Below are positions 4,401 through 23,900 of a DNA stretch of 64,000 nt, piece by piece. Each line of letters starts with the position of its first letter. Position 1 is the first letter of the stretch. The position numbers and the translations under genes were made by a program. This DNA is from Styela clava (Eukaryota), in contig NC_135254.1 in assembly GCF_964204865.1 (NCBI RefSeq), forward strand, positions 11,098,001 through 11,162,000, given 5' to 3'. The notes beneath the pieces are model-generated. The model made no database searches, had not been told where the DNA came from, and was given only the letters and a program-made list of their open reading frames with translations.

Positions 4401-6931
4401 ATCTTTAAATTACATTAAGTTGATTGCATGTTTGACGTGATGAGAAAATTATTTTACAAATTTACGAAGATATTTTAAATGAGTAAGGTTCAATTTTAGA
4501 AGTAAGCTATTACCAAAATTTAGCAGTGAAAGAAAAGGAAGACTATAGCGCAGAAGTAAAAAGTAATTGCGTATAGTCATCTATGCCAATGTTAGTTAAA
4601 TAACTGGTTGCTAGATAATAAAAAAAACTCCGATAACAGTTTGTAGAGCAATGAGTTTAATCTATCACTGATAAAAAATTTTACCATAAATTACACAAAT
4701 TTATCATTGATTGAAATTTTTATTACTAACCAAAAATCTCAAATATTGAATCATCATGAGCTCCTGCAGTTGAATCGTCATCATTTGTAATTTCTGGGGA
4801 AATAGAAATTGTGTAGGCCTACTTATTGAATGAGAAAATTGGCACAGAAACAATAGGTCAATAAAGTAGCTTATCACTAAACGATTAAAAACATGGTACA
4901 CATTGCAATGTAGAGTCATTTATTTTTTATGTTGAATATATTTATATTTTTGAGAACATTTTTGAATAAATAAATATTTTTTATATATATTCATAGCGAC
5001 ATAGATTGTAAAACTAAATCAAAAATAGTCTATCCCAAAATGAGTAATGCAATTAAGTTTTGGAGATTTGCTTTCACTTCTTTTCAAATCTAAAATAACT
5101 TTTGATACGATCAACATAGAAGAAGAAAATCATAATTTCACAATTTATAATATCTAACTCAAATGGAACTTGAAATATCACACAGAATTTTTCATAAATA
5201 GCAAACCTTCGTCTCCACAACCATAAACTTGAATATCATTAATAGGGAGGCCATTGCTATCCAATACTTTCACTTGAATTGCTGTTGTTTCGACGTAGAT
5301 CGGGAGTTCAATTTTTTGCATGCCATACGTGTCGCTGATGCCGTCAAATACCTTAAAAATAAATGTTTATTTTATGTGTCGATAGGATGTTTCAAAATCT
5401 GTTTCTCAAGTAACTTAATTTATCATTTTTAAAGTTCTTCATTAGAGAAGATACTACTAATTGACTTATTAAATGAATATAGTAATAAACTGAATTGTAA
5501 AGAAAAAATATATTACCATAGGGTTTCCGTCCCCATCATTGAAGGGCACAAATGATCCAGAAAGCAATTTGAAAAGAATTTCAAATTCAGAAGAACAATC
5601 TCTTTGAATCGTTATACTTGATACAACCTCAAGATTTGTCAAATCAAACTGAAATGTTCAAATAACTAACATTTTATTTCAGCTTAAAATTTATGCATGC
5701 GTCTCGGATAAAATGGGCATAGTAAAGTAATTCAATATATACTCAGGCTCCATATTATTAATCGCTTATCATTACAGCGGAAGCATTAGTCATCTCGAAC
5801 TAATGAGATGTATTTCAAAAGAATACTCAAAGGGAGACTATACGTTATAATTATTGCATTTTATTGATTAGAATAACCAACATTTAATGCTCAAAAGTTC
5901 ATGCAATCTTTTTTGTATTTGATCTTACACATCTATCGAACTGGCTCTTTCTGCTCGGGTAAATGAGCTTTTCAGAATAGTTTTTCATAATTATCAAAGT
6001 TGGTCTTGAACGGGCTAAGAGTTTAATGTACTTCAATAACTAAATAATAAGTACAGTTAGTTGAATAACAGAAAATAATTATCGAAAAATTTCGCGAAAA
6101 ACCTGAGAATATCTCACGTCACACTACTAGAGCTTCGCGGCGCATAGTTATATATTTACACAGGTTTATACTTGTACAAAGCTTAAATGATAACAAAAAT
6201 TTATGATTATAATACAATAAAAAATCAAACCGTTATCTGATTTCCGAATTGATTTTCAACATCAAGTTCCGGTGGACCGTATGGTGTTGCAGTTTGACCC
6301 TCCAGGCGAACGTATTTGTCACAAGCTAAGGTATGTAAGATTGAAATTAGATTTTATAATTTATGTGATTTATACTAATTGACTTTGTAGCAATCAGGTA
6401 TTCAGAGGATGTTTGACTTCATTATTATCCAAAAATTGTTGAGGGAACTTTTGAGACGTTCAAACCAGTTCAATACTTTTCAGTTATGTTAAAAAAAATT
6501 CATACGTAACTATAATATACGCAATCTATTCAAATATTTTGAAATAAATTATCAGCCACTCTTGCAATTTTAGGAGATAGTTAAATATATAGAAGGATGA
6601 AAGTATGTACACACTTGTGCATTCATTAACATCCAAAGGATCGACATCTTCTCTCTCGGTTCCTCTGGCAATATCATGGCAATAATCAGATGGAGGTCTA
6701 GCCTTGGATGCCGAAATCATAAATAAAACTAAAAATATATCAAAACGAGTATTATTCAAATATAACTATAGTGAAATATTGGTATCATTTTAAGATTGGA
6801 CTCGAAATATTAGTTTATATATACAGTATGGTCTGTTTACGCATTTTAAAACTGGCGAATAATAATTTAATAATTTCATTATCATATGATATGATCATTA
6901 TTAAGCACTTACTCAAGATTGCGAGCTTCAT
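1449..6931 (-). CDS. Astacin (M12A) metalloprotease 1: signal peptide, discoidin/F5-8C-like module, antistasin-like remnant, prodomain, astacin domain, (PK)n linker, ShKT
   Basis: 13 GT-AG exons splice in frame: 6913-6931, 6615-6728, 6231-6325, 5517-5648, 5207-5351, 4731-4793, 4174-4290, 3654-3827, 3201-3361, 2650-2785, 2385-2548, 1884-1989, 1449-1552. Motifs: MKLAILILFMISASKA signal; LYEGDI pro-motif; GCWSPVG; [19 protein letters not shown] zinc site; SIMHY Met-turn; C-terminal CKDRASNCSELTNYCSYAMVKRYCRKTCEIC* (ShKT). Confidence 0.92.
1884..1925 (-). repeat. Coding hexanucleotide-unit repeat encoding a PKPKPKPKPKP linker
   Basis: Plus strand ggtttcggctttggtttcggttttggtttcggtttt; translates to TKPKPKPKPKPKP between the astacin and ShKT domains. 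Confidence 0.8.
4011..4120. mobile_element. Short palindromic MITE related to family A, intronic
   Basis: Arm ggtgtccccgaagtatgtgcaccaaaatgcgcacaacctga is inverted-matched by tcaggttgtgcgccatcttggtgcacacattatttgagcgcc; shares the agtatgtg.accaa.atg motif with family A. Confidence 0.7.
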
Positions 6932-6995
6932 TGCTGCGTCTGATCTTGAAAAACCTGAATCATAAAAATTATATATGGAAGATAAGGATAAATAG

Positions 6996-7008
6996 AGTTT
7001 TATAAATA
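6996..7008 (-). promoter_or_regulatory. Candidate TATA box of astacin 1
   Basis: Minus strand TATTTATAAAAA about 70 nt upstream of the ATG at 6931. The AT-rich background makes this weak. Confidence 0.3.
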
Positions 7009-7538
7009 GGCGCAGGCAACGCTTATTTGGCATATATTCACGACAAATTTTATACTAGAAAAATTTTGAAAAGTAATTGTTCTTCATTTTAAATGAGTAA
7101 ACTACTGACGATATTCAATCTGGAAATTTGCAAAATATTATATATAAATTTGTATTTATATATTTCTTACCTTTAGTTTTCAACACCAGTAAAACTTTTG
7201 TAGAATGTAACATTCGTTTATCTTGTGTCTTATATGCATTTGAAACAGGAAAGATGATTTTTCATATGAATCAAGATAATCGTTACGCTCATCTTGGAAA
7301 AGATACATTGAATCATACCCGCTTATATTGCGTGATGTATTGTAATGTTGATAATATGAAGTTATGTGCTGTTAAGAACGTTGTGAAGTTTATTATTTTT
7401 GGGTTTCATTTGAAACATTATTTTTACTGCTTGCTAAAATATGTACGTACTATTATTGTACATTATTTTTTACTTACTTAATTTAAATAATTAGGAAAGA
7501 AAATTAAACAATTAAAGATAACTGCAGTGATTAGCTTA

Positions 7539-8161
7539 CAGGGTTGGGCAAGGTTTTCAGACCAGGGGCCAAAACTTTGGCCCACCCAGAGTTGTGGGCC
7601 ATCTAAGTGTGACGTTACATTTTATGAACAGAATTTTATTTACAGTGTTACAAAAGCAAAAGTGGGAAACAATCTTAACAATCCATTTCTTTTTAAAGGT
7701 TCTTTTCTCGCTACCGATTTTTCTCTACCCCGGTACATGTGGAAAAAATTAGTCTTTGATAATTTAGGTATTAATCTTCATGATGTAGGGTGCCCAAAAT
7801 AGATGTTGCAACAGATTATTAGAAACCATCATGGAACGCTAGACTAGCAAGTATGCGTAAGATACGAACTATGGGGACGTTAGAAAAACGTTGGCACTAA
7901 ATTGAAACTCGAGTGCGTGACCGGACACGATAATCGCACAACGCAAAAAAAGTGTGAAAAGCACACAGTCGAACCGAGTGAGCGAGAAAACGTAACGATT
8001 TGTCAACGTCCCCTCAACATGAAAGTCTGTGCCAATCTAAAATACAACTTGGACAGAATAAAACCATATTGCAGCGTACAGATTGCAATATCAACAACTA
8101 TCAGATTGAATCACCCAGCGGGCTGAGTTTGGCCCGCGGGCCGTAGTTTGCTCATATTATG
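7539..8161. mobile_element. Degenerate non-autonomous hAT-type element
   Basis: Left end cagggttgggcaagg; right end ggcccgcgggccgtagtttgctca, typical of hAT/Charlie MITE termini. No clear TSD. Confidence 0.55.
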
Positions 8162-9224
8162 ATTAGCAGATGAGTTGGATGAGTGCGAAATGACCATTTC
8201 AATTATTTTTTTAGACAATTCTTTATTTGGCAGATTTAATTTAATTATGAGTCTATGTAACTATTATTGAGCGAGAGATCCAAATAAAGAAATATTCTAA
8301 TTTGGGTAAAATGATTTCATTTCTGTTTATTGCAATATTTTAGGAGTGAAAATATTCGAGTTTGCGTAAAAAGTGAGAATGACGTAACACTTTGTGATTC
8401 ACAATATTTTAGTATTTATTTTGATAAGCTGTTGACGCCATCGCATTTGACTTGCTTGCTTACATAGTGATTAATAATCCATCTATGATTAATTAAAATG
8501 TATCATTCCAATTTATTAATAAACAGAAAACTTTATTTTTATATGATATATGTTTTAATTATTGTTATGTGTCATCTAACTCATGACACAGCCAAAAAAA
8601 TATTCCATAGGAAATTTGAGTTCATTTTATATATCTAACAATTGGTTATTACTCCGAAATATATTTCTATAATATTTCTTACGTGTTAGCTAAATGTAAT
8701 GACTTAAATTTGTCACTACAAAAATATTTATTGTCGTTCTTTGTGAATGGACAGCTCTCGTCAAAAATACTGATAAATACAATAAAAAAAACGTATAGAA
8801 ATTGACAATATATTGCCAACTAAGATAATAAAAATAAATCATCAGGCACTAATAGACATTATTCGTTTTGGAAAAAAGCTTTTATTATACGGAAATGTTT
8901 GAAATTTCAAAAGCCTTGAATTTTTCACTTTTGACATGTCAATACAACAAAAAAGTGCTGAAAGAAAGGAACTTGCACATCCTTTTTTCACACCAATCTG
9001 TTGCACATATGCACAAATACATAAGATACATTAATAAGATCAATATTATAACGATTTTATTGAAATAATAAGTTTGTTGACACCAACAACACGTTCTGCT
9101 TTATTCGCGCATTTTCTTACTGGTCCTAATTCTTCGGAACAGAAACGGGCCAAGCCTTTACAATCTGCGGTCGTTTTATTAATATTAATAACAGGATAGC
9201 AGTGCTCAAATATATGAACACGAA

Positions 9225-9495
9225 GGCTAAAACGATGTTGATGACGTCATCACACAACACTTTAAAGTTGCAAACAAATCTTATAGAGCCCACAGAAATT
9301 TTTCAAATAAATAAACGTAATAGACTTCTAGCGACAACAACAATCTTTAACCACTAAAATTTCGAAGCAATTGGTCCAGTAAGTAAAAAAAGTAGTTTTT
9401 TTTTAACAACAATAAATAATAGTAACAAGGAGAAGCAAAATACCAAGAATACTAACAACAACAAAACTTTAACAACACGATCCCTAGGTGCACTC
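9225..9495. mobile_element. Interspersed repeat family D with internal (AAC/AAT)n microsatellite, copy 1 (possibly Helentron-derived)
   Basis: cttctagcgacaacaacaatcttta...aagcaattg...aacaacaacaa...acgatcc..ggt recurs at about 50770-50950. Confidence 0.65.
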
Positions 9496-9902
9496 CGCCT
9501 GAATCGGGATCAGGCGAATGCGAGATGAGTACTGACGGAAGCAGCCATTGTTAGTAAGTCAGTTACGTGAGTAACAAGGTATGTATATGCGTGAAAAAAC
9601 GAACGTACAGAAATGAAAATTATTAATACATATTTTCCAATTTGAATATTCTCTCGTCATGAAGTCGAACTAAAAATGGTTCCAATTTTTACAGTTCTGA
9701 TGTTTTCTATACAAATATATTAAAAAGCTATAATTTAAACATACTTGCGTAGGACTATTTATATCAACTCCACAATCAAATATTGTTACATGCTACAATA
9801 CAGGCATTACAATCTACTACGTTTATCGTTTAGGTTTTTATCGTGATATGTTGTTGCGATTGTGTGAATTATCCTACTTTCATGAAGCAACAGGACAACA
9901 AG

Positions 9903-10173
9903 AAAACGAGAATATCGGTCAGAATACCGAAGACTTATCGATCGAAAATTGAGGGATCCCCCAAAACAGCGCTCTTACTCCATAGTGACACCTTGTGTTC
10001 CATCACTAATTAATCAATAGGCTTCTAGTACGACATATGACGAATGCACATGCAAAATCTGGAGCAGATTCAATCTCGCTTTCGTGAATTATCGCGTGCA
10101 TCTAACAGACAGACAGTCAAACAAACAGACGAATACCTATCAACATACTTACCGATTAAAATCGATAAGTAAT
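9903..10173 (-). mobile_element. Helentron/DINE-like non-autonomous element, family C copy 1
   Basis: Reverse-complement homologue of 36690-36953. Has the subterminal inverted repeat acttatcgat...atcgataagt, a (CAGA)n microsatellite, a terminal stem-loop and T-rich flanks. Confidence 0.75.
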
Positions 10174-11069
10174 AAAGTTGATGTTCCTTTTATGACAATA
10201 AGTTTGACATAGTTTGTTCATATTTGCATGAATATATCATCAGGTAAATTTCATGTCGATACATTTCCAAAATACAGACTTATTATCAGTTCCCCATATA
10301 AAACTTTAATCATTGCTCCAGAAAGACATCCCAACCCCGTCAGGATTTTATGAATAGATCCAATTTTTTCATTTTAATTCTTTCTTCAAGTGAGAAAGCG
10401 ACATGAATTTTTGAAAAAGTATTTATGATTTTTGCAAATGCTTTTCATAACAGCTATAATATTTGTTCCTTATTTGACTTTTTAACCCTTCGTCTGTCAG
10501 ACATTGATTTCATTATCTGCAAGTCTGTTAGCGTTTCTACATTTGATGGTGATGTAAAACAAACCCCAGTTTCGTTGAACAAGAGTAATATAAAAAACAC
10601 AGATTTTTTCGTACATTGTCACTCACGTTTCCAATCGTATAGTTGCAGCCAATATAAAAATATAACATTTTTCTCGTTTGCTATTGTTCTTCAATAAGTT
10701 GAACCAAATCAAAAATACTTGGAACGAGATTTTTATATTGTTTATTACATTATTATAAAATTTTGGCACAAAAATTTTCCGTTGTAACATATAGATTTAA
10801 TGCATGAACCATCGAGAATTTATAATGCATTATTATCTTTGCAGATATTTAATGAAAATGTGCACCAAGTGATAGAAATACTTATGTTTCTGTGTTAATA
10901 TTCAACAAAATTATCATATCTGTGGCTCAAAAATTTCCAGGAGCAAATTTAATACACTATTGAATTTTTCCGGTGATCTGCCATACAGAGAAGAAATTTT
11001 TGAAAAATTAAAAATAAAATTACAGCAACAAAATAACAATCAAATTTTGTATTGATACGGTGAATTCTC

Positions 11070-11712
11070 CTAGTCGGAATCAGAATAATGTTGATTATAG
11101 GTTTTTTTCACTCCTTTCGCAAATTCAAAACTCTTTTGCTTCAACTTTTCTCCATACGAAAGAACGGTCCTGCCAGCTGCTTTGATACTTTTCCTATAAT
11201 TAAACGAAAGAAAGAGTTGGAAATATTTAAGCGTTTTTTATTTAATATATATATAAATATTTAATTAAACGTCTTAATTTAAATTACCCGAAACTTTCTA
11301 ACCAGCCTGAAGCGGTACTTGCTATTTCCTCCGAATCTGCAAAAAAAATAAAAAAAATAATGATGTTGAAATGGATATTGTTAGAAATTGTATCAACTTC
11401 AACTAGAATTCTACCAAATGATTTTCAATATTTTTACGTGCGGCCATCTAGTGGTAGATAAATATGGAGTCAGCTCAATTACTGTTACCGTTTAAATTCT
11501 CATACCATAATATTCGACTTATAAGATATTATTATAATTTGTTCATTGTTCACCAGAAGTGAAAAAAAAAATTTTTTGAATGCTCTCTCAATAAACTCGT
11601 TAATCATTCCAAAGATTTTCCTAAAAAAAAATTATAGTTTACCTGGAATTGCAGAACCTTCAGCAATCACTGCCAAAAATGCAACAAGGCCAAGAAGAAC
11701 AACGAACTTCAT
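11070..11712 (-). CDS. Small secreted amphipathic alpha-helical peptide precursor, 80 aa (antimicrobial-peptide-like or exchangeable-apolipoprotein-like)
   Basis: Three GT-AG exons 11643-11712, 11288-11336 and 11070-11193 total 243 nt and give MKFVVLLGLVAFLAVIAEGSAIPDSEEIASTASGWLESFGKSIKAAGRTVLSYGEKLKQKSFEFAKGVKKTYNQHYSDSD*. Textbook signal peptide; intron phases 1 and 2 join without stops. Confidence 0.85.
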
Positions 11713-12720
11713 TTTGACTTTTGATTGTTTGAAGTGAAACAAATTATTACAGTTTTTTTGATTTTTTGAATTTTTTCTAAGATAAAAAACAAAGTATTAG
11801 GTTGGAGGAATGGTGATACGTTCATATTAAATTTCCTTGGCGAGTCCACCGTTTTGTAATTAGTGTATGGAGCATTGGTATTGTCGAAATTTGAAAAAAA
11901 AAACGCATTTTCATACCATAAAACTACTCTTGAAAACGTTTTCTTTCAATTTTCACCAGTTTATCATTTTGTATTTCTAACATATATTCTTAAACGTATT
12001 GACTAATGGAATAAATCAGTGAAATTGAAGTATCTTCAACCGTATCTTTTCCTCTTTTTATTACATGTATTTCGCCATTTCATTATGATCTTTGCCAATC
12101 TCAAAAATCACAATATAAATACGTCAAGAAAACTTGGTAATAAACTACGCTTCCAATCTTCGACAAAACAGTCGTGAGCGTAGAATATACTCACATAAAT
12201 ATTACTATTTAGGTGAAAACATTGTTCTAATTCATATATATATCATATAATTCTATATAATATGTAAGATATTGCATTTAAAAAAAAACATCATATGAAC
12301 AGTAACAACCCTTAAATTCTCCTGTTTCCTTCTCGAGCTAGAATTCTGATCTACATTTTCAGAATGCACACAGATTTATTTGTATTAAAGTCAGACCATA
12401 TTGCTTAGACCAATGAAAAAAGAGAAGGAATTGCATAACCTATGTTGTTCTTTGTTAATGAAGGGTCCAAAGGTTCGAATGACGCATAATCTGTTGTTGT
12501 CTTCAATTCGATCACAGAACAAATAAATTTTTGTTCGTCTTCCATTCTCAGAAAGATTATCATCGAACATGATAGAACGCGTTTGATACAATGATATGTT
12601 TGTTTGTGAAAGTTATAAATCGCTGACGCAAATATTTGTTTGCAACATAAAACTGTCTGACTGACACTAATCTCTGTACCCTGCAATCGTCAGCAAACAA
12701 ATTCATTACTTAGTCTTATC

Positions 12721-13021
12721 CACCGGTTCTTAACCAGTGGGCCATGGCCCACTGCTGTGCCACGAAAACATTTAAAATAGGCCACAGTTCTATTCAAAAT
12801 TGCTAGTTTTACTTTTATCACTGTTTTTAATCGTAATTGTAGTAGCAATGAATGAGGGTGCTGTTTTCTGCTACTGAGTGGTAATTCTAAAACTGGAAAT
12901 GTCCATTTTGTGCGTAAAAATTTTATTTTTTCTTGTAGTTTTCCCATTGCATGAAAAAAGTTGATGAACCACAGAATTTTTGTGCAGCGAAAATGCGCCA
13001 CAAAAAATATGAGGACCACTG
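12721..13021. mobile_element. Degenerate hAT-type MITE
   Basis: Left end caccggttcttaacc..tgggccatggcccac; right end tgaggaccactg. Confidence 0.55.
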
Positions 13022-13652: not shown

Positions 13653-16600
13653 TCAGCAATATCCGCAGGTCCTACGACATTCCTTTTTCAGTGCAATTCT
13701 AAGAGTCGGTAAATTACACATAAGTTTTATATTTTTGCAGTCCAGACGACTATCGATGCATGTAGTCTCTCGTTTACCTGTTGAATGAACAAATATAGAC
13801 TAAATTCCGATAAATTTGTTCGTTATTTGTATAAATGTTGCACAATTTAAGATAATTTATGTTTATTAAACTAGCTTCAACGATGTGCAATGAAGTACGG
13901 ATAAATTTTCTCGTAAACGCACATGAACAGAAGCCACTGCAACGTATAAAGCAGTAACTGTATTTTGAAAGCTTCCTGCTCGGCGTTGACACACATGCAG
14001 AATTCATTACATCATGTGTATAGGTTGCGATAGGTTGAATCCAATTTAATTAATCTGTCTCTCTGTCGTAATTTGAAATCTCTGAACTTTTTATCGTTCC
14101 ACAGAATAGGTGACTCATCTTTAATCTGAGTAAATCACCTTCAGATTTCAATCAGATATGACATTTTGGTGTTTACGTACAAAATAAACGCCAGTTATGG
14201 TATTTTCGTGTAGGAGTTTGAATTTTAAAATGACGAATGCGTACAAAGTTAAGTATACCAGGTGTTTTTGAATTGCTAAATCTTTCAGTTTAGCCTTTTA
14301 TTGACGCTTTATGAATGATTGATGAAAGCCACAAACAAATTCATTAATAATCTAGATTAAACCATTACTATTACCTCTAAAATATGATGAAAAGAAGTTG
14401 GAACTTGAATGGCAGGGGTACATTTTATTGATTTGTTCAATATCGGAATACGATAGTCCCTTGCTCTGAAAATAAAGAAAAATGTATTCAATACAAATTA
14501 TTCGATAAAGAAGTAAATGGTATATTTTACTCCGCAATTTAGCGTTGGATAGCGAATTGAACCTGACTATGTTATAGTTGCAGATCAACTGTTATTTCTT
14601 GCGACCGATCTCTCACTAAATGTGTGATAAATTAAATAGATCGAATACAATTTGGAAGGTATCAGAATCGACGGAAAAAAATCACTGTATATTTAGCACT
14701 AAGGTAAAAATATACGATTTATTCCTTACTATACCACAGTGAAAAAATAAGTTGCTGGTTACCTTCATTTTCTGAACTCACTAAAGTGCAATAATTCTAA
14801 CTTCGTCAACTTTTACCTTTTAATGTTTGACCTTTTTACACAAATCAAGTCACAAACTAATTGCTTCATGGTATGTCTATATACTCAGTCTGGACTTATT
14901 TTATGTTTTCCAGAAGATTTTTCAATTTATAAATTAATTTTACTTTGTTAATGTATCATACCTGAGTTTGTAATTCTCGTCCAGTTGCATCTAACAAAGT
15001 AGGGAGGCCATTTTTAGAAAATGCTGTGCTACTGTAGTGCATAACTGATCCTATGTCATATTTGGATCCATATGATACAACTTCGGAACTGGAGAATTTT
15101 TGAAAATTCTCTAAATCGTCTGTGAAACATGAAGTGCAATTTTGGACAGTTAGTGTGGTATATTTTCAAATACGTTGTCTTTTCACTTTAGTTGCAAAAG
15201 TAATGAAAGAAACATAATGTATATTCTATATGCAAAATCCCAACTAAATCGAATCCGAGACTACCAAATTACATAACAAAACCTAAAGAAACTAAAATTT
15301 AACTGCGTTCAGTCTTTGCAATATACAATCTCGTTCGCTGTAATTTGGATAGATAAATACCATCAGTTGAGGGATAGCATGAAGGATATGAGCCAGCTAT
15401 TTGAAATAATTTTCACATAACATATATATATATATATATACTCGGAATAGTAAATATCATTTTGAAACTTAAATAATTGTTATTTTACGATTACATGAAA
15501 AAATAAGTTCGATATTGAACATAATTTATTCTAGATCCTTCTAATGAGGAAACAAATTTTATTATTCCTCGGGATAGGTACCATGTATTACGTCCAACAC
15601 CACATGCACGCATGATGCGAATATTTAGCTACTGACCTGTATCAATGTTTTCATAAACAATTTTGATATAGTTATCTCTGTCAGGTCTGCTATGTTCGTG
15701 CCAAAATCCAATGGAATGCATGATTTCGTGAACAACTATACCTTTATTACTACAGCCTCGTCCTATAGAAATCTGAAAAGTTATACTTTGAGATAAAAAA
15801 AAATCTCAATGATCATAATTTCAACGATTTCAACGAGTTTAGAATATTGCGAAATAAATAATTTTTCCATCCTCGATTCCAGAATGTTTGAAACAATCTT
15901 GAAATTTAGGTGTCGCACCATATAGTTCAATAAGTTGCGATGATCGTTTCGCTATTGCAGCGTACCTGGTTAGCGCCTTGGTGCATTCCAACATCGGACC
16001 AACATCCTCGGCCAACTTTAAATTCAATATAATTCTCTTCGTTGTTTTTCTTTTTCAATCGAATGCAAGTTTTACTTTCGATTTCTTCAATTGCCTCATT
16101 TATTGCCGACTTAGCCGCTGTGCCTAAATATTATTTAATAAAATTATCTTTTAATATTTTTTGTAATATTTTTCCCACTCAACTCTACGGAAAAACTGGG
16201 GATTGAGCTCAAGAATTTTAATCCCTGGCCATATTATAAACTAAAACTGTCAAAAATGACATAATTGTATCAATTCCAATGTCCAAAACAAAATGCTCAC
16301 GACTGCATACGGTTAACAAAATCAGACTAAAAATGAAATCAGTTCAACCTTTTTATTATAAAAAATGAAATGGTATTAGGGGTCACCTAGATACGGCGTC
16401 AAAACATAAGGTATGATGTAATGTCCACTGGTTCTATCCAACGGCCATCGATTGTGAGTTCCGGATCCGGCCCGACTCCAACCACCTCGCAACATGTTCA
16501 TCAGTTGTACAATCGATGTTTTTCTCAGTCGAATATCAGACTCGAACAAACCTGATCGAAACAGTTTTCATTTCATTTTTTGAATACGTGTATATGTATG

Positions 16601-17947
16601 AAAGTGAAGTATTTTGAATCGTTTTAAAGCGTTGTCATCACAGTTTACGCTCAGATTCAAATACCATGCTCACAATATCACTTTAGAAGTAATAAATTGA
16701 CTGGACAAAGCCGAGGGTTTCTGTTCTACCAGAAATAGCATCTTCGTGCAAATAGTATTATATAAGTTCTTATCGATTGGTAAAAAATATACATGAAGTC
16801 TAGTTTTTTGTAACATTTTAATTCTGAACCCGACTATTGAATACCCAAATAGTTGACTGTTTGAAGTTCAGTCTATCATTCCAAAAAGCAATTTTAAAGT
16901 AATTCAGAAATTACCATTGTTTCCCCTGTAATCGCATTTGCATGTTGCGCAACCATTTGATCCTCGTTTATACCAGATGCAGGTACTAGGACAGTCACGT
17001 AGTATGTTTGTGGAGCATTGTCGTCCAGCTGGAGTACAAATGTTTATAATTTAGTTATCATTAGCTATATCATTAACTATTGAAAGTAAACGATTGCACA
17101 TTGACACTGTTTTAACCTATGACCTTACACGGAAGAGATTTCCGGTATATTTTTGTGTATGTTTTCATGATTATAAATATTCGGAATAACGACAAAATTA
17201 TTTTTTTTTCCAGACTAAAGCCTAATAAGTCTATTCCATATTATACCTTGTTTGAGAAACACAGAAATACTTGGTTCTATCAGGTCATTCTTGAGTTCTT
17301 CTTGCTTCTCTGAAATCAAAAGCATTTAATATTATGTACAATATTGAATTCCTAAACTATTCACAAAATCTACTTACTGTAACACGCATTTACTTCCCAA
17401 ACTGTGGCATTCGTTTTAAATCCATTCAAAATTTCTTCGCAGCTGTATGCTCCCACACACATGGTGAAGGATGAACATAGAACAAACAATAGTACACAAA
17501 TTGCTCCCACACACATGGTGAAGGATGAACATAGAACAAACAATAGTACACAAATATCTCCTAAAACAAAAAATGGGAAAAATTCAATTGTGTCTTTAAT
17601 TTTAGGGTAATGAACTTTTGAAACAAACTTCAAAAATCATGATATAAATTGAGTTCTTCGAAAGCAAAATTATATAGATTATTCGTTCTTTCTTACATTA
17701 CCAGCAAGCTATCAAAACGACTGCTAAAAAACGAGTAAAATCCCTTAAATTGCGTTAAAATTTTCGTAGTCAAAACCCTTTCAAAGAGCTCAATTACAAT
17801 ATACACTTTATATGTTACATTCACAATAATTATAAATTCGTTTTATTTCTAGTGAAAAACGTTCCAGTCAGACAAACGATCACATACTGTAATATCTTCT
17901 GCAGTAGATACATAAATTCATTACATACCTGATATCATTTCGACCAT
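13653..17947 (-). CDS. Astacin (M12A) metalloprotease 2: duplicated signal peptide, antistasin-like module, prodomain, astacin domain, ShKT
   Basis: 10 exons in frame: 17929-17947, 17378-17560, 17247-17309, 16915-17028, 16387-16551, 15966-16123, 15637-15772, 14962-15119, 14375-14465, 13653-13777. Motifs: [20 protein letters not shown]; LFESDI; GCWSDVG; [19 protein letters not shown]; SVMHY; [35 protein letters not shown]. Confidence 0.92.
17448..17555. repeat. Perfect 54-bp tandem duplication inside a coding exon
   Basis: tgctcccacacacatggtgaaggatgaacatagaacaaacaatagtacacaaat occurs at 17448-17501 and 17502-17555; encodes [18 protein letters not shown] twice. Confidence 0.95.
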
Positions 17948-20976: not shown

Positions 20977-23900
20977 TTAACCCCGGCGTGGGGCCCCACC
21001 AGCACCTGGTCTTCTTGCTCCTGGTCTCCTTGCGCCTCCTGCGCCGGGTCTTCTACCGCCTCGAACGGGAGGAGGAGGAGCTGGGGTAGTCGGAGCTTCG
21101 GTTGTTGTTGTTACTGGTTGTGGTCGTCCTACTCTCACTCCTCCGCTAATCACCCTTCCCGTCCCTCTAGTTCCAGCTCTGTCTCTCACGGACTGCTTGA
21201 AGAACTCACTGCATGCCATTCCGTCTATAAGTTCTCCAACGTCTTCGTTGTTTTCACCTTTCCAGTAGGCCTTTCCTTCACAGCACCAGTAATCTCTTCC
21301 ATCAATGCAACTATTTCCACAACAAACTGCTTTCTCTTTAGGAATTCCTCCTAACTCGCGAGGTGTACCATCGCAACACTTGAATGCGTCGGCATCCATT
21401 GAGGAATCACCTGACGGGATTTTAAAATAAGAACAATTAGAACAATATATAGTTGTAAATATTATTTAAAATATGTGACCATTACTAGTAAAAATGTCGT
21501 TAAATAAATAATCTAAAAACATACCACAGCATTTTGTATCAGGAAATTCAGCTCCATTGAAAACATTGGGACCGCAACATATTCCATCTGCACCAAATGG
21601 GTTGTCCAATCTCACATCGTCGCAGTATATTACTATTCTTATGTCGTACGTAGTATTTCCGACACAACGCCCAAACTCTTTGTAAAGATTCCGGTTGACA
21701 ACATCATCACAACAAAGATGTGACAAACGATTCATTGCCATTTCTCCGCAACATTCCAAATCATTTAAACCAATTTTTTTACCATCTTCACCAGCTAAAC
21801 AGAAAGTATGAATTAAAAACGTTTGTATTAATTTTGAAACGAAAAATGCAATCTACGAAAGATAATTGAAACTTACTCAGTGATGCATTGACACCCCCAC
21901 AGCATGTTTGTGAATCGTAATCATAAGGAACAAGCGTTGATGGATCACCGAAATCTCCACAGCATCGAGTATGGTGACTGGTCTAAAGTAAATGTTAGGG
22001 ATTTATAGAAAAGCACTGGAAATGTTAATTCGTTTTAACAGCGAATGAAGACGACAAAGAATACTCTGACCAGAAGTAAAAAAGTAAACTAGGAGTGGTT
22101 TGTGGAAAAAAACGTTTCATCGCTAACTTAGTCTGAAAATAATTCATCAGTTCTTATTTTTCTTCGCACAATTTTCATTTCGCAATTTGATTCATATTTT
22201 TCTAATCTCTACACATTTTTATTAATTCAAATTATATATATATATATGTATATAACGACTAAAAAAGCTTTTTTGCTAATAGAAAATATTATATGAACGC
22301 CAATAAATACAATATCAAACTGTAATAATCAAATACGGCCCAATAGATTTTTATTTGACAGACATAAGCCGCCAAGTTCTGAGGCTTATAGATTGATAAA
22401 AAGAAATCATGGCAGTTTTCACAAGCCTTATATGTGAATAAATTAGTATTATTAATGAAAGTGAGTTAAATATATATACCACGATTACCCCAATCAATTC
22501 AACATGGCGGTCTATTAAAATATATAAGCAGATTTGGCTTTAGGCCCATATGAAGAAATGGGATTTGTGAAATGTGAAAAAAAGCTCACCTCTCCTCTTG
22601 AATCTGGCGGATTGTCGAATACGGTTGTACCGCAGCATGTCTGTTCATACGCGTCAAAGCTGTCGGTTCCACAACAGGCCGGCCACACCATGTCAGACTG
22701 AAATTTAACAGAATAAAATGTTGTTATCAAGCCATCGCAAAGATGTAATCGTAATTTAGCGAGGTTTTTATGCACAGGTTTTTAATTACAAATCATTATT
22801 GGAAAAATAAACTATTTGCTTTAAAACATGACTCCAGTTTTTACTTATTAAATTATAGTTATCGCATAAATATACCAGAATCGATCATAGAATCCTCTTT
22901 AGCCGATGCGCAATAGTTTCTGCGATTGCAACGTTTATTAATCTCAATGTTGAGCACATAAGACAATGGCGGTCTAATCAAAGTTATAATCCAAAACTAC
23001 AAGTCCGTAAATCCAATGAAGTAATTGGCTTGGGTGATTACTTTTTTTCAAACGTACGCCGGTTTACTCGTTTAATTCGATTTTAGACTCGAACGTGAAG
23101 CTGACATCTTCGGATATATATAATGTTAAAATACCACGAAAAATTAAACATCCATAATTCATTTATGACATCATAAACCTTTCTGCATGACAAATAGTAC
23201 ACTTCAGTATTCTTTGTTTAAAGTTCTGACTAGAGTTATGTTTTTGTATAATTTTGATTGGAACTAATTTCGAGTAACACGTAATAATGTAATTAAATGC
23301 TCATAAATTAGATCAATTAAAGTGGCGAACAATCTGCTACACTTCTAGTGCTCAATAGAATCTTACTCCAACTATTCCTCCGCCGCAACACACTCCAGTA
23401 AGTTCATCATACGGCGTTCCAGCGCAACAACCTGCTCCCTCCGTCTCCAGGTCGTATACCGTGTTGTTGCAGCAATTACCAGCTTCTGAAAAGTAGGCTC
23501 TTCCAGCACAACATTCATCACCCTAAATCATGGAAATATAACAAGTAGAAATTAGCACACATGTTCAATATATAGGCAAATCAGTAGAGATTTTAAAATT
23601 AAAATTCTAGCATGTACAGCTCAGCTTGCGCTATTACAGCGAGCTATACTTTGTTGGTGTCGTAGTCGGTCAGTCAATAAACTAGTAATATACATGTTCA
23701 AAAATGTTGTCAAAAACGTGCGTTTACCTCTTGTATATATTGTTATGTCAAACTACATTGATAAAACCCTACTAATGTTATCAGATCGACAAAACATGAT
23801 AAAACATACAATAGGTTGTCTTTCAAAATACTAGATGCACGATTGAAAAATTCTTTTATTGAATATGTAACTAAACTTTGTTTCATGATTGTTTTATCAT

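What the first reader, a model, noticed from the sequence alone, without database searches (positions are those of the whole stretch)
11070..11712. Hidden 80-aa secreted amphipathic-helix peptide gene between two astacin paralogs: new antimicrobial peptide or invertebrate apolipoprotein-like protein
Seen: three short exons, absent from the ORF track, splice into a signal peptide, an acidic spacer (IPDSEEIASTAS), a cysteine-free core GWLESFGKSIKAAGRTVLSYGEKLKQKSFEFAKGVKKTYNQHY (8 Lys + 1 Arg versus 3 Glu) and an acidic tail SDSD. Hydrophobic residues recur in an 11-residue register (WLESFGKSIKA / AGRTVLSYGEK / LKQKSFEFAKG / VKKTYNQHY). Known: styelin and cecropin-type antimicrobial peptides begin GW[LF] and their precursors have neutralising acidic pieces. 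Vertebrate exchangeable apolipoproteins (ApoA/C/E) are built from 11-mer amphipathic repeats and have a phase-1 intron near the end of the signal peptide followed by a phase-2 intron, the same phase order seen here. Inference: a membrane- or lipid-binding secreted peptide of one of these two kinds. I recognise no exact match.
Basis: partly seen in the sequence, partly recalled or inferred. Interest (0 to 1): 0.85.

Follow-up and report, generated by a model that had tools for sequence, protein, structure and literature searches.

The report
Orphan secreted amphipathic-helix peptide gene
Between two astacin protease genes of a sea squirt lies a small, probably real three-exon gene with no known relatives. 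It encodes an 80-residue secreted peptide built around one long positively charged amphipathic helix, the layout of an antimicrobial-type peptide, but neither its expression nor its function could be tested here.

Summary
On the minus strand, three exons (11712-11643, 11336-11288, 11193-11070) join through canonical GT-AG introns of phase 1 and phase 2 into an 80-codon frame. It encodes a signal peptide, a short acidic piece, a cysteine-free Lys-rich core and an SDSD tail.

Four things argue for a real gene:
- The three exons sit exactly on local GC peaks.
- Codon usage is best in the proposed frame, and only 0.07% of GC-matched open segments score as high.
- It is the only strict signal-peptide start in the window.
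- The exon-3 peptide has a hydrophobic moment that peaks at exactly 100 degrees (0.16% of shuffles reach it), and AlphaFold folds it as one helix.

It is single-copy in its genome. Nothing related turned up in Pfam, PDB sequences, 1.84 billion protein representatives or the metagenome contigs.

It fails the defining features of styelins that I could test. It shows no apolipoprotein profile match, no class-A charge pattern and no 11-mer sequence repeat.

The exons were searched one by one and never joined.

My best reading is an unannotated orphan host-defence-type peptide. The scan has already found several other small three-exon secreted-peptide families elsewhere in this genome, though not this gene. 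Interest is modest.

The parts
11643..11712 (-). Exon 1: start codon, then 23 codons plus 1 nt. It encodes the signal peptide: n-region MK, a 15-residue hydrophobic core, and small residues offering possible cleavage after A17, G19 or A21. The following intron is phase 1.
   Evidence: GC is 0.43. It is the only strict signal-peptide-like ATG in the window. Codon log-odds is +0.36 per codon.
11337..11642 (-). Intron 1, 306 nt, GTAAAC...T-run GCAG.
   Evidence: GC 0.26.
11288..11336 (-). Exon 2, 49 nt. It encodes the acidic spacer (D, S, E, E ...) and the first residues of the core (G-W-L-E-S-F). The following intron is phase 2.
   Evidence: GC is about 0.46. F, L and W fall on the apolar face when the exon-3 helical register is extended backwards. 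I worked this out by hand from the table.
11194..11287 (-). Intron 2, 94 nt, GTAATT...AATTATAG.
   Evidence: GC about 0.17.
11070..11193 (-). Exon 3: 40 whole codons plus the stop. It encodes a 36-residue Lys-rich amphipathic helix, then the SDSD tail and TAG. An internal Lys-Lys pair ten residues from the end is a possible processing site.
   Evidence: Moment 0.453 at 100 degrees, reached by 0.16% of shuffles. AlphaFold helix over residues 3-37, pLDDT 86.7.
10948..10953 (-). ATTAAA, a possible polyadenylation signal 116 nt after the stop codon. This is inferred only.

Best explanation
This is a genuine, so far unannotated, single-copy three-exon gene of a sea squirt. Earlier notes of the scan name the species as Styela clava.

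Shown by the sequence: the product is an 80-residue prepropeptide. It has a cleavable signal peptide, a short acidic N-terminal piece, and a core of about 43 residues that is cysteine-free and carries a net charge of +6. The core can form one continuous amphipathic alpha-helix. A short acidic tail follows.

Inferred: the product is secreted or stored in granules, and the acidic pieces offset the cationic core. The helix then lies flat on anionic membranes and perturbs them, as linear cationic host-defence peptides do. It works like the alpha-helical haemocyte peptides of tunicates but is not a member of their sequence families.
For: - Gene model with canonical splice sites.
- Exons sit on GC peaks.
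- Frame-specific codon usage beats a GC-matched null, with 0.07% reaching the observed value.
- Unique strict signal peptide in the window, and chance models are rare.
- Coherent amphipathic periodicity over 36 residues, p about 0.002. It continues in register across the exon 2/3 junction, worked out by hand.
- Single helix predicted at pLDDT 86.7.
- Basic residues cover the polar face.
- The locus is unique sequence, not a repeat.
- Acidic propieces and roughly 80-residue precursors are documented for styelins (PMC8659048).
- Other agents report several small three-exon secreted cationic peptide families in this same genome, some of them spliced as predicted. These are unchecked leads, not evidence for this gene.
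Against: - There is no RNA evidence.
- No homologue or paralogue was found anywhere, so no conservation supports the reading frame.
- No recognised cleavage site precedes the GW start.
- The apolar face is narrow and holds Gly, Ser, Ala and His, and mean hydrophobicity is low. That is weaker than in strongly lytic peptides.
- My chance-model criteria were set after seeing the gene.
- AlphaFold readily predicts helices for sequences of this kind.
Confidence: 0.45

Rival explanations
1. The gene is real and encodes a secreted amphipathic peptide, but its role is not antimicrobial. It could be a signalling or hormone-type propeptide cut at the Lys-Lys pair, a tunic, adhesive or fertilisation factor, or a small secreted phosphoprotein. 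The spacer holds a Ser-x-Glu motif (D-S-E-E).
For: The evidence that the gene is real is the same as for the best explanation. The Lys-Lys pair and acidic tail are, and the S-E-E motif is. Net hydrophobicity is low and the apolar face is narrow. Another agent judged one sea-squirt peptide family 'hormone-type or defence-type' without being able to decide.
Against: There is no Gly before the basic pair to signal amidation, and only one dibasic site. A 36-43-residue coherent amphipathic helix is unusual for neuropeptides. No family match of any kind was found.
Confidence: 0.25
2. It is not a functional gene. It could be a chance splice-compatible frame, a never-translated transcript, or a decaying remnant.
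For: No RNA evidence could be obtained. There is no homologue or paralogue. Signal-peptide-like ATGs alone arise about 0.45 times per random window. Other GC peaks in the same intergenic stretch belong to a dispersed repeat. One earlier 'hidden gene' in this genome was judged a chance frame.
Against: Several independent signals coincide: splice sites, three GC peaks exactly on the exons, frame-specific codon usage (0.07% of the GC-matched null), and amphipathic periodicity (0.16% of shuffles) that is kept across a junction. Complete chance models occur about 0.013 times per window, and none of them had the GC contrast or the moment.
Confidence: 0.2
3. It is a tunicate relative, or a convergent analogue, of the small vertebrate exchangeable apolipoproteins of ApoC-I type. 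It would bind lipid particles reversibly through 11-mer amphipathic repeats.
For: The size and make-up resemble ApoC-I, which has an 83-residue precursor, a 57-residue Lys-rich mature protein, four 11-mers and LPS binding (PMC6928722). Intron phases 1 then 2 are confirmed here. The moment at 98.2 degrees is nearly as high as at 100 degrees. There is a weak language-model resemblance to synuclein, another 11-mer lipid binder, at score 0.78, below any useful threshold.
Against: No Pfam apolipoprotein family matches, even at E<=10, and no PDB sequence matches. Basic residues sit at the centre of the polar face, not only at the interface, so the class-A pattern is not met. There is no sequence repeat at lag 11. 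The common 33-codon block of the family's third exon (PMC6854765) has no counterpart in a 16-codon exon 2. I could not verify the family's intron phases.
Confidence: 0.05

Closest known systems
Styelins (Styela clava haemocyte antimicrobial peptides) and botryllin
   Same: Both come from tunicates and have a precursor of roughly 80 residues. Both have a linear, Cys-free, cationic, helical core beginning Gly-Trp, and acidic material in the precursor. The styelin description is in PMC8659048 and PMC9966394.
   Different: In styelins the 31-32-residue mature peptide follows a 22-residue signal directly. It ends in a Gly amidation signal and is followed by a 26-residue C-terminal propiece, and a KHK motif is conserved. 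Here 14-19 residues separate the signal from GW. There is no amidation Gly, the tail is 4 residues (10 if the Lys-Lys pair is cut), and KHK is absent. No sequence search linked the two. I had no tool-supplied styelin sequence for a direct alignment.
Clavanins (Styela clava)
   Same: From my own memory, not tested: clavanin precursors of about 80 residues carry a short anionic propiece between the signal peptide and a helical mature peptide. That is the same order of parts as here.
   Different: Clavanins are 23-residue, His-rich, amidated peptides with a longer C-terminal extension. The core here is about 43 residues, Lys-rich, with a single His.
Cecropins (Pfam PF00272)
   Same: Both are long, Lys-rich amphipathic helical peptides of low mean hydrophobicity with a Trp near the N-terminus.
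   Different: There is no Pfam match at E<=10. There is no Gly-Pro hinge followed by a hydrophobic C-terminal helix, and the helix here is amphipathic throughout.
Apolipoprotein C-I and other exchangeable apolipoproteins
   Same: Both are small secreted Lys-rich proteins made of amphipathic helix. Precursor size is similar, 83 against 80 residues (PMC6928722), and both have two coding introns.
   Different: There is no profile match, no class-A charge arrangement, no 11-mer sequence repeat and no 33-codon block (PMC6854765).

Membership tests
Styelin family | Mature peptide starts directly after a ~22-residue signal peptide | tested here: not met
   The feature comes from PMC8659048. Here GW lies at residues 37-38, which is 14-19 residues after any plausible signal cleavage at A17, G19 or A21.
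Styelin family | C-terminal Gly amidation signal followed by a ~26-residue propiece | tested here: not met
   Here the frame ends ...H-Y-S-D-S-D-stop, with no Gly before the tail or before the Lys-Lys pair.
Styelin family | Conserved KHK motif | tested here: not met
   The feature comes from PMC9966394. The exon 2 and exon 3 translations hold no KHK.
Styelin family | Detectable sequence similarity to styelins | tested here: inconclusive
   No hit came from the word-based search or from HMMER over 1.84 billion representatives. A 40-residue query has little power there, and no direct alignment to a styelin sequence could be made.
Cecropin family (PF00272) | Match to the Pfam profile | tested here: not met
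   Zero families at E<=10 for the exon-3 peptide.
Exchangeable apolipoproteins (ApoA/C/E) | Match to an apolipoprotein Pfam profile | tested here: not met
   Zero families at E<=10, and no PDB chain at E<=10.
Exchangeable apolipoproteins (ApoA/C/E) | Tandem 11/22-residue sequence repeats and a common 33-codon block in the third exon | tested here: not met
   The feature comes from PMC6854765. The lag-11 self-similarity is not above shuffles, p 0.22. The middle coding exon has 16 codons.
Exchangeable apolipoproteins (ApoA/C/E) | Class-A helix: basic residues at the polar/apolar interface and acidic residues at the centre of the polar face (established knowledge, Segrest classification) | tested here: not met
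   K1, R8, K26 and K30 lie 160-180 degrees from the apolar centre, while E15 and E23 lie at 140 degrees.
Exchangeable apolipoproteins (ApoA/C/E) | Shared intron positions and phases | tested here: inconclusive
   Phases 1 then 2 are confirmed here. The papers I could read give intron numbers but not phases.
Linear cationic alpha-helical host-defence peptides (a functional class, not a homologous family) | Signal peptide, net cationic Cys-free core, amphipathic helix, anionic propiece | tested here: met
   The core is net +6, the spacer -3 and the tail -2.
Linear cationic alpha-helical host-defence peptides (a functional class, not a homologous family) | Antimicrobial or membrane-permeabilising activity; expression in immune cells | not testable with these tools
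   This needs synthesis and assays.

The most novel reading that the evidence does not exclude
The gene is a urochordate representative of the small exchangeable-apolipoprotein / ApoC-I-type lineage: a secreted Lys-rich amphipathic-helix protein that serves both lipid or LPS binding and defence. It would then mark a stage before the vertebrate ApoA/C/E family.
Probability: 0.04. Interest if true: 0.75.

Novelty: new member of a known kind. Interest (0 to 1): 0.33.

Why it matters
If it is expressed, this adds an unannotated gene with no known relatives to the set of tunicate secreted peptides. Its unusually long (about 43 residues) uninterrupted amphipathic helix could be tested as a salt-tolerant marine antimicrobial scaffold. 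It also shows that small spliced genes are missed between annotated genes in this genome. It does not open a new principle: secreted cationic helical peptides with acidic propieces are well known, and the scan has already met several other such families elsewhere in this genome.

Tried and rejected

Homology, exon by exon and by reference only. The joined 80-residue product was never searched or folded.
- Exon 3 against 5.8 billion proteins: nothing.
- Exon 3 against 1.84 billion representatives: only two bacterial repeat proteins at E about 5e-4. Their scores add up over repeats, so I take them as chance.
- Pfam and PDB sequences: nothing.
- ESM Atlas: best score 0.82, with synuclein at 0.78, all below useful thresholds.
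- Metagenome contigs: 597 pattern matches, none a relative. A first try at 40 residues was under the size limit.

Paralogues in the same genome:
- Exon 3, exon 1 and the whole locus as DNA each found only themselves.
- Another noted 'hidden helical peptide' gene 6 Mb away (L004) has an unrelated signal peptide.

Other checks:
- An exact look-up of ten window ORFs found none in the protein collection. This is uninformative, because annotated eukaryotic proteins are spliced and the species is polymorphic.
- I considered whether exon 1 is an alternative first exon of the downstream astacin. That gene has its own signal-peptide exon near 6759, and the two astacin signal exons do not resemble exon 1.
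- I looked for the GC peaks being RNA genes. There are no Rfam or tRNA hits in 6000-13000.
- I could not find a styelin sequence in the papers held, so no direct alignment was made.

Full report
**What is there**

- Exon 1 (11712-11643) begins at an ATG in an A-rich context. It encodes 23 residues with the n-, h- and c-regions of a secretory signal peptide.
- Exon 2 (11336-11288) encodes the acidic spacer and the residues G-W-L-E-S-F.
- Exon 3 (11193-11070) encodes 36 Lys-rich residues, then S-D-S-D and TAG.

The donors are GTAAAC and GTAATT. The acceptors are a T-run plus GCAG, and AATTATAG. The residue counts in the finding are correct, and the product holds no cysteine.

**Is it more than chance?**

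Several independent signals coincide.
- GC content: exon GC is 0.43, 0.46 and 0.37, against 0.26 and 0.17 in the introns and about 0.28 in the flanks. Within the 5.6-kb intergenic stretch, the three exons are three of the twelve highest non-overlapping 60-nt GC peaks. The higher peaks lie at 7.5-10.1 kb, and the ones at 9.9-10.2 kb belong to a dispersed repeat.
- Codon usage: I built a codon table from five long HSP70 reading frames of the same genome. The proposed frame scores +0.19 bits per codon. It is the best of the six frames and the only sense frame without stops. Among random open segments of the same lengths, 0.25% reach that score, and 0.07% do when matched for GC.
- Signal peptide: 11712 is the only ATG in the window, on either strand, that passes a strict signal-peptide rule. 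Random Markov windows give 0.45 such sites.
- Chance models: complete three-exon models under the same rules arise about 0.013 times per random window. None of them had the GC contrast or the helical moment seen here. I set those rules after seeing the gene, so the figure is optimistic.
- Uniqueness: the locus is unique sequence in the 377-Mb assembly.

I put the chance of a real protein-coding gene at about 0.8.

**The peptide**

The 36-residue exon-3 part has a hydrophobic moment of 0.453 that peaks at exactly 100 degrees. Only 0.16% of shuffles reach this. AlphaFold, run without an alignment, gives one helix over residues 3-37 at mean pLDDT 86.7. That is modest evidence, because such sequences are readily predicted as helices.

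On the helical wheel, the 90-degree apolar sector reads V, V, H, L, I, S, A, F, G, Y. Lys and Arg cover the polar face, including its centre.

I extended the register backwards by hand from the table. This puts F at -20 degrees, L at +40, W at -60 and A at 0, while E sits at +140 and S at -120. The amphipathic pattern therefore runs unbroken across the exon 2/3 junction, which is itself an argument for that junction.

The core is net +6, the spacer -3 and the tail -2.

**Context**

All three genes lie on the minus strand.
- The upstream astacin has RWP at about 16450, its zinc motif at 15730 and its Met-turn at 15048. It ends in a ShK-type Cys module at 13656-13799.
- The downstream astacin has its zinc motif at 2743 and its own signal-peptide exon near 6759.

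The peptide gene is therefore a separate unit in a 6.9-kb intergenic stretch. It does not borrow from or lend exons to the astacins, and the signal peptides are unrelated.

Earlier notes of this scan call the genome a sea squirt, Styela clava. I did not verify the species directly. A dense HSP70 array on one contig does fit the tandem Hsp70 expansion published for that species (PMC7540406).

**Relatives**

None were found. I searched exon by exon, by reference. As the operators require, I left out the joined product, so the full 80-residue protein was neither searched nor folded.
- Exon 3 found only itself in its own genome, and so did exon 1.
- The word-based search of 5.8 billion proteins found nothing.
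- HMMER over 1.84 billion representatives gave two bacterial repeat proteins at E about 5e-4, which I take as chance.
- Pfam, PDB sequences and the metagenome contigs gave nothing.
- The ESM Atlas gave only sub-threshold resemblances, the best named one being synuclein at 0.78.

A 40-residue query has limited power. 'Orphan' here means that no relative is detectable, not that none exists.

**Comparison with known families**

Styelins are made as a 22-residue signal, then a 31-32-residue mature peptide directly after it, a Gly for amidation and a 26-residue C-terminal propiece (PMC8659048). They share a KHK motif (PMC9966394). The present gene meets none of these four features. It shares only the tunicate source, the overall size, the Gly-Trp start and the presence of acidic material.

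Exchangeable apolipoproteins share a 33-codon block and 11/22-mer repeats (PMC6854765), and ApoC-I is an 83-residue Lys-rich precursor (PMC6928722). Here there is no profile match, no class-A charge pattern and no sequence repeat at lag 11. The periodicity cannot separate 11/3 from 3.6 residues per turn over 36 residues. I could not check the claimed apolipoprotein intron phases in the papers available.

**Verdict**

The general reading, a secreted surface-active amphipathic peptide, is supported by computation only. Both proposed kinships are unsupported.

The most likely mechanism is that of a linear cationic host-defence peptide whose acidic pieces offset the core until release. The steps from 'secreted helix' to 'membrane-active' and on to 'antimicrobial' are inferred.

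Other agents of this scan report several different small three-exon secreted cationic peptide families elsewhere in this genome. This singleton therefore fits a known theme rather than opening a new one.

Noticed in passing
G000:C3:19.2-25.2 Mb (loci L010-L034) and G000:C17:10528867-10546015 (L005-L007): More than 50 HSP70-type exon matches are packed on one contig, many with stops inside. Three intact intronless HSP70 genes sit side by side on another contig. This fits the tandem Hsp70 expansion published for Styela clava (PMC7540406).
   Followed up: partly
window 9895-10180: A dispersed repeat of about 280 bp (SINE/MITE-like) with 75-94% identical copies on many contigs. The first look found 7927 candidates. 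It accounts for some of the GC peaks in the intergenic stretch.
   Followed up: partly
window 13656-13799 (-): The upstream astacin ends in a ShK-type six-cysteine module, with the frame ending ...TCGYC followed by a stop.
   Followed up: no
window 17370-17633 (-): The open frame that probably holds the first exon of the upstream astacin contains an exact 18-residue tandem duplication within its hydrophobic start.
   Followed up: no
window 20977-21399 (-): A 140-codon ATG frame with a Cys-rich head and a Pro/Arg/Gly-rich tail lies in the most GC-rich 2 kb of the window. Its identity is unknown.
   Followed up: no
window 7527-8126 (+): Two GC-rich open frames of 91 and 74 codons lie in the intergenic stretch, with 60-nt GC up to 0.60. 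The DNA search showed no repeats here. They remain unexplained.
   Followed up: no
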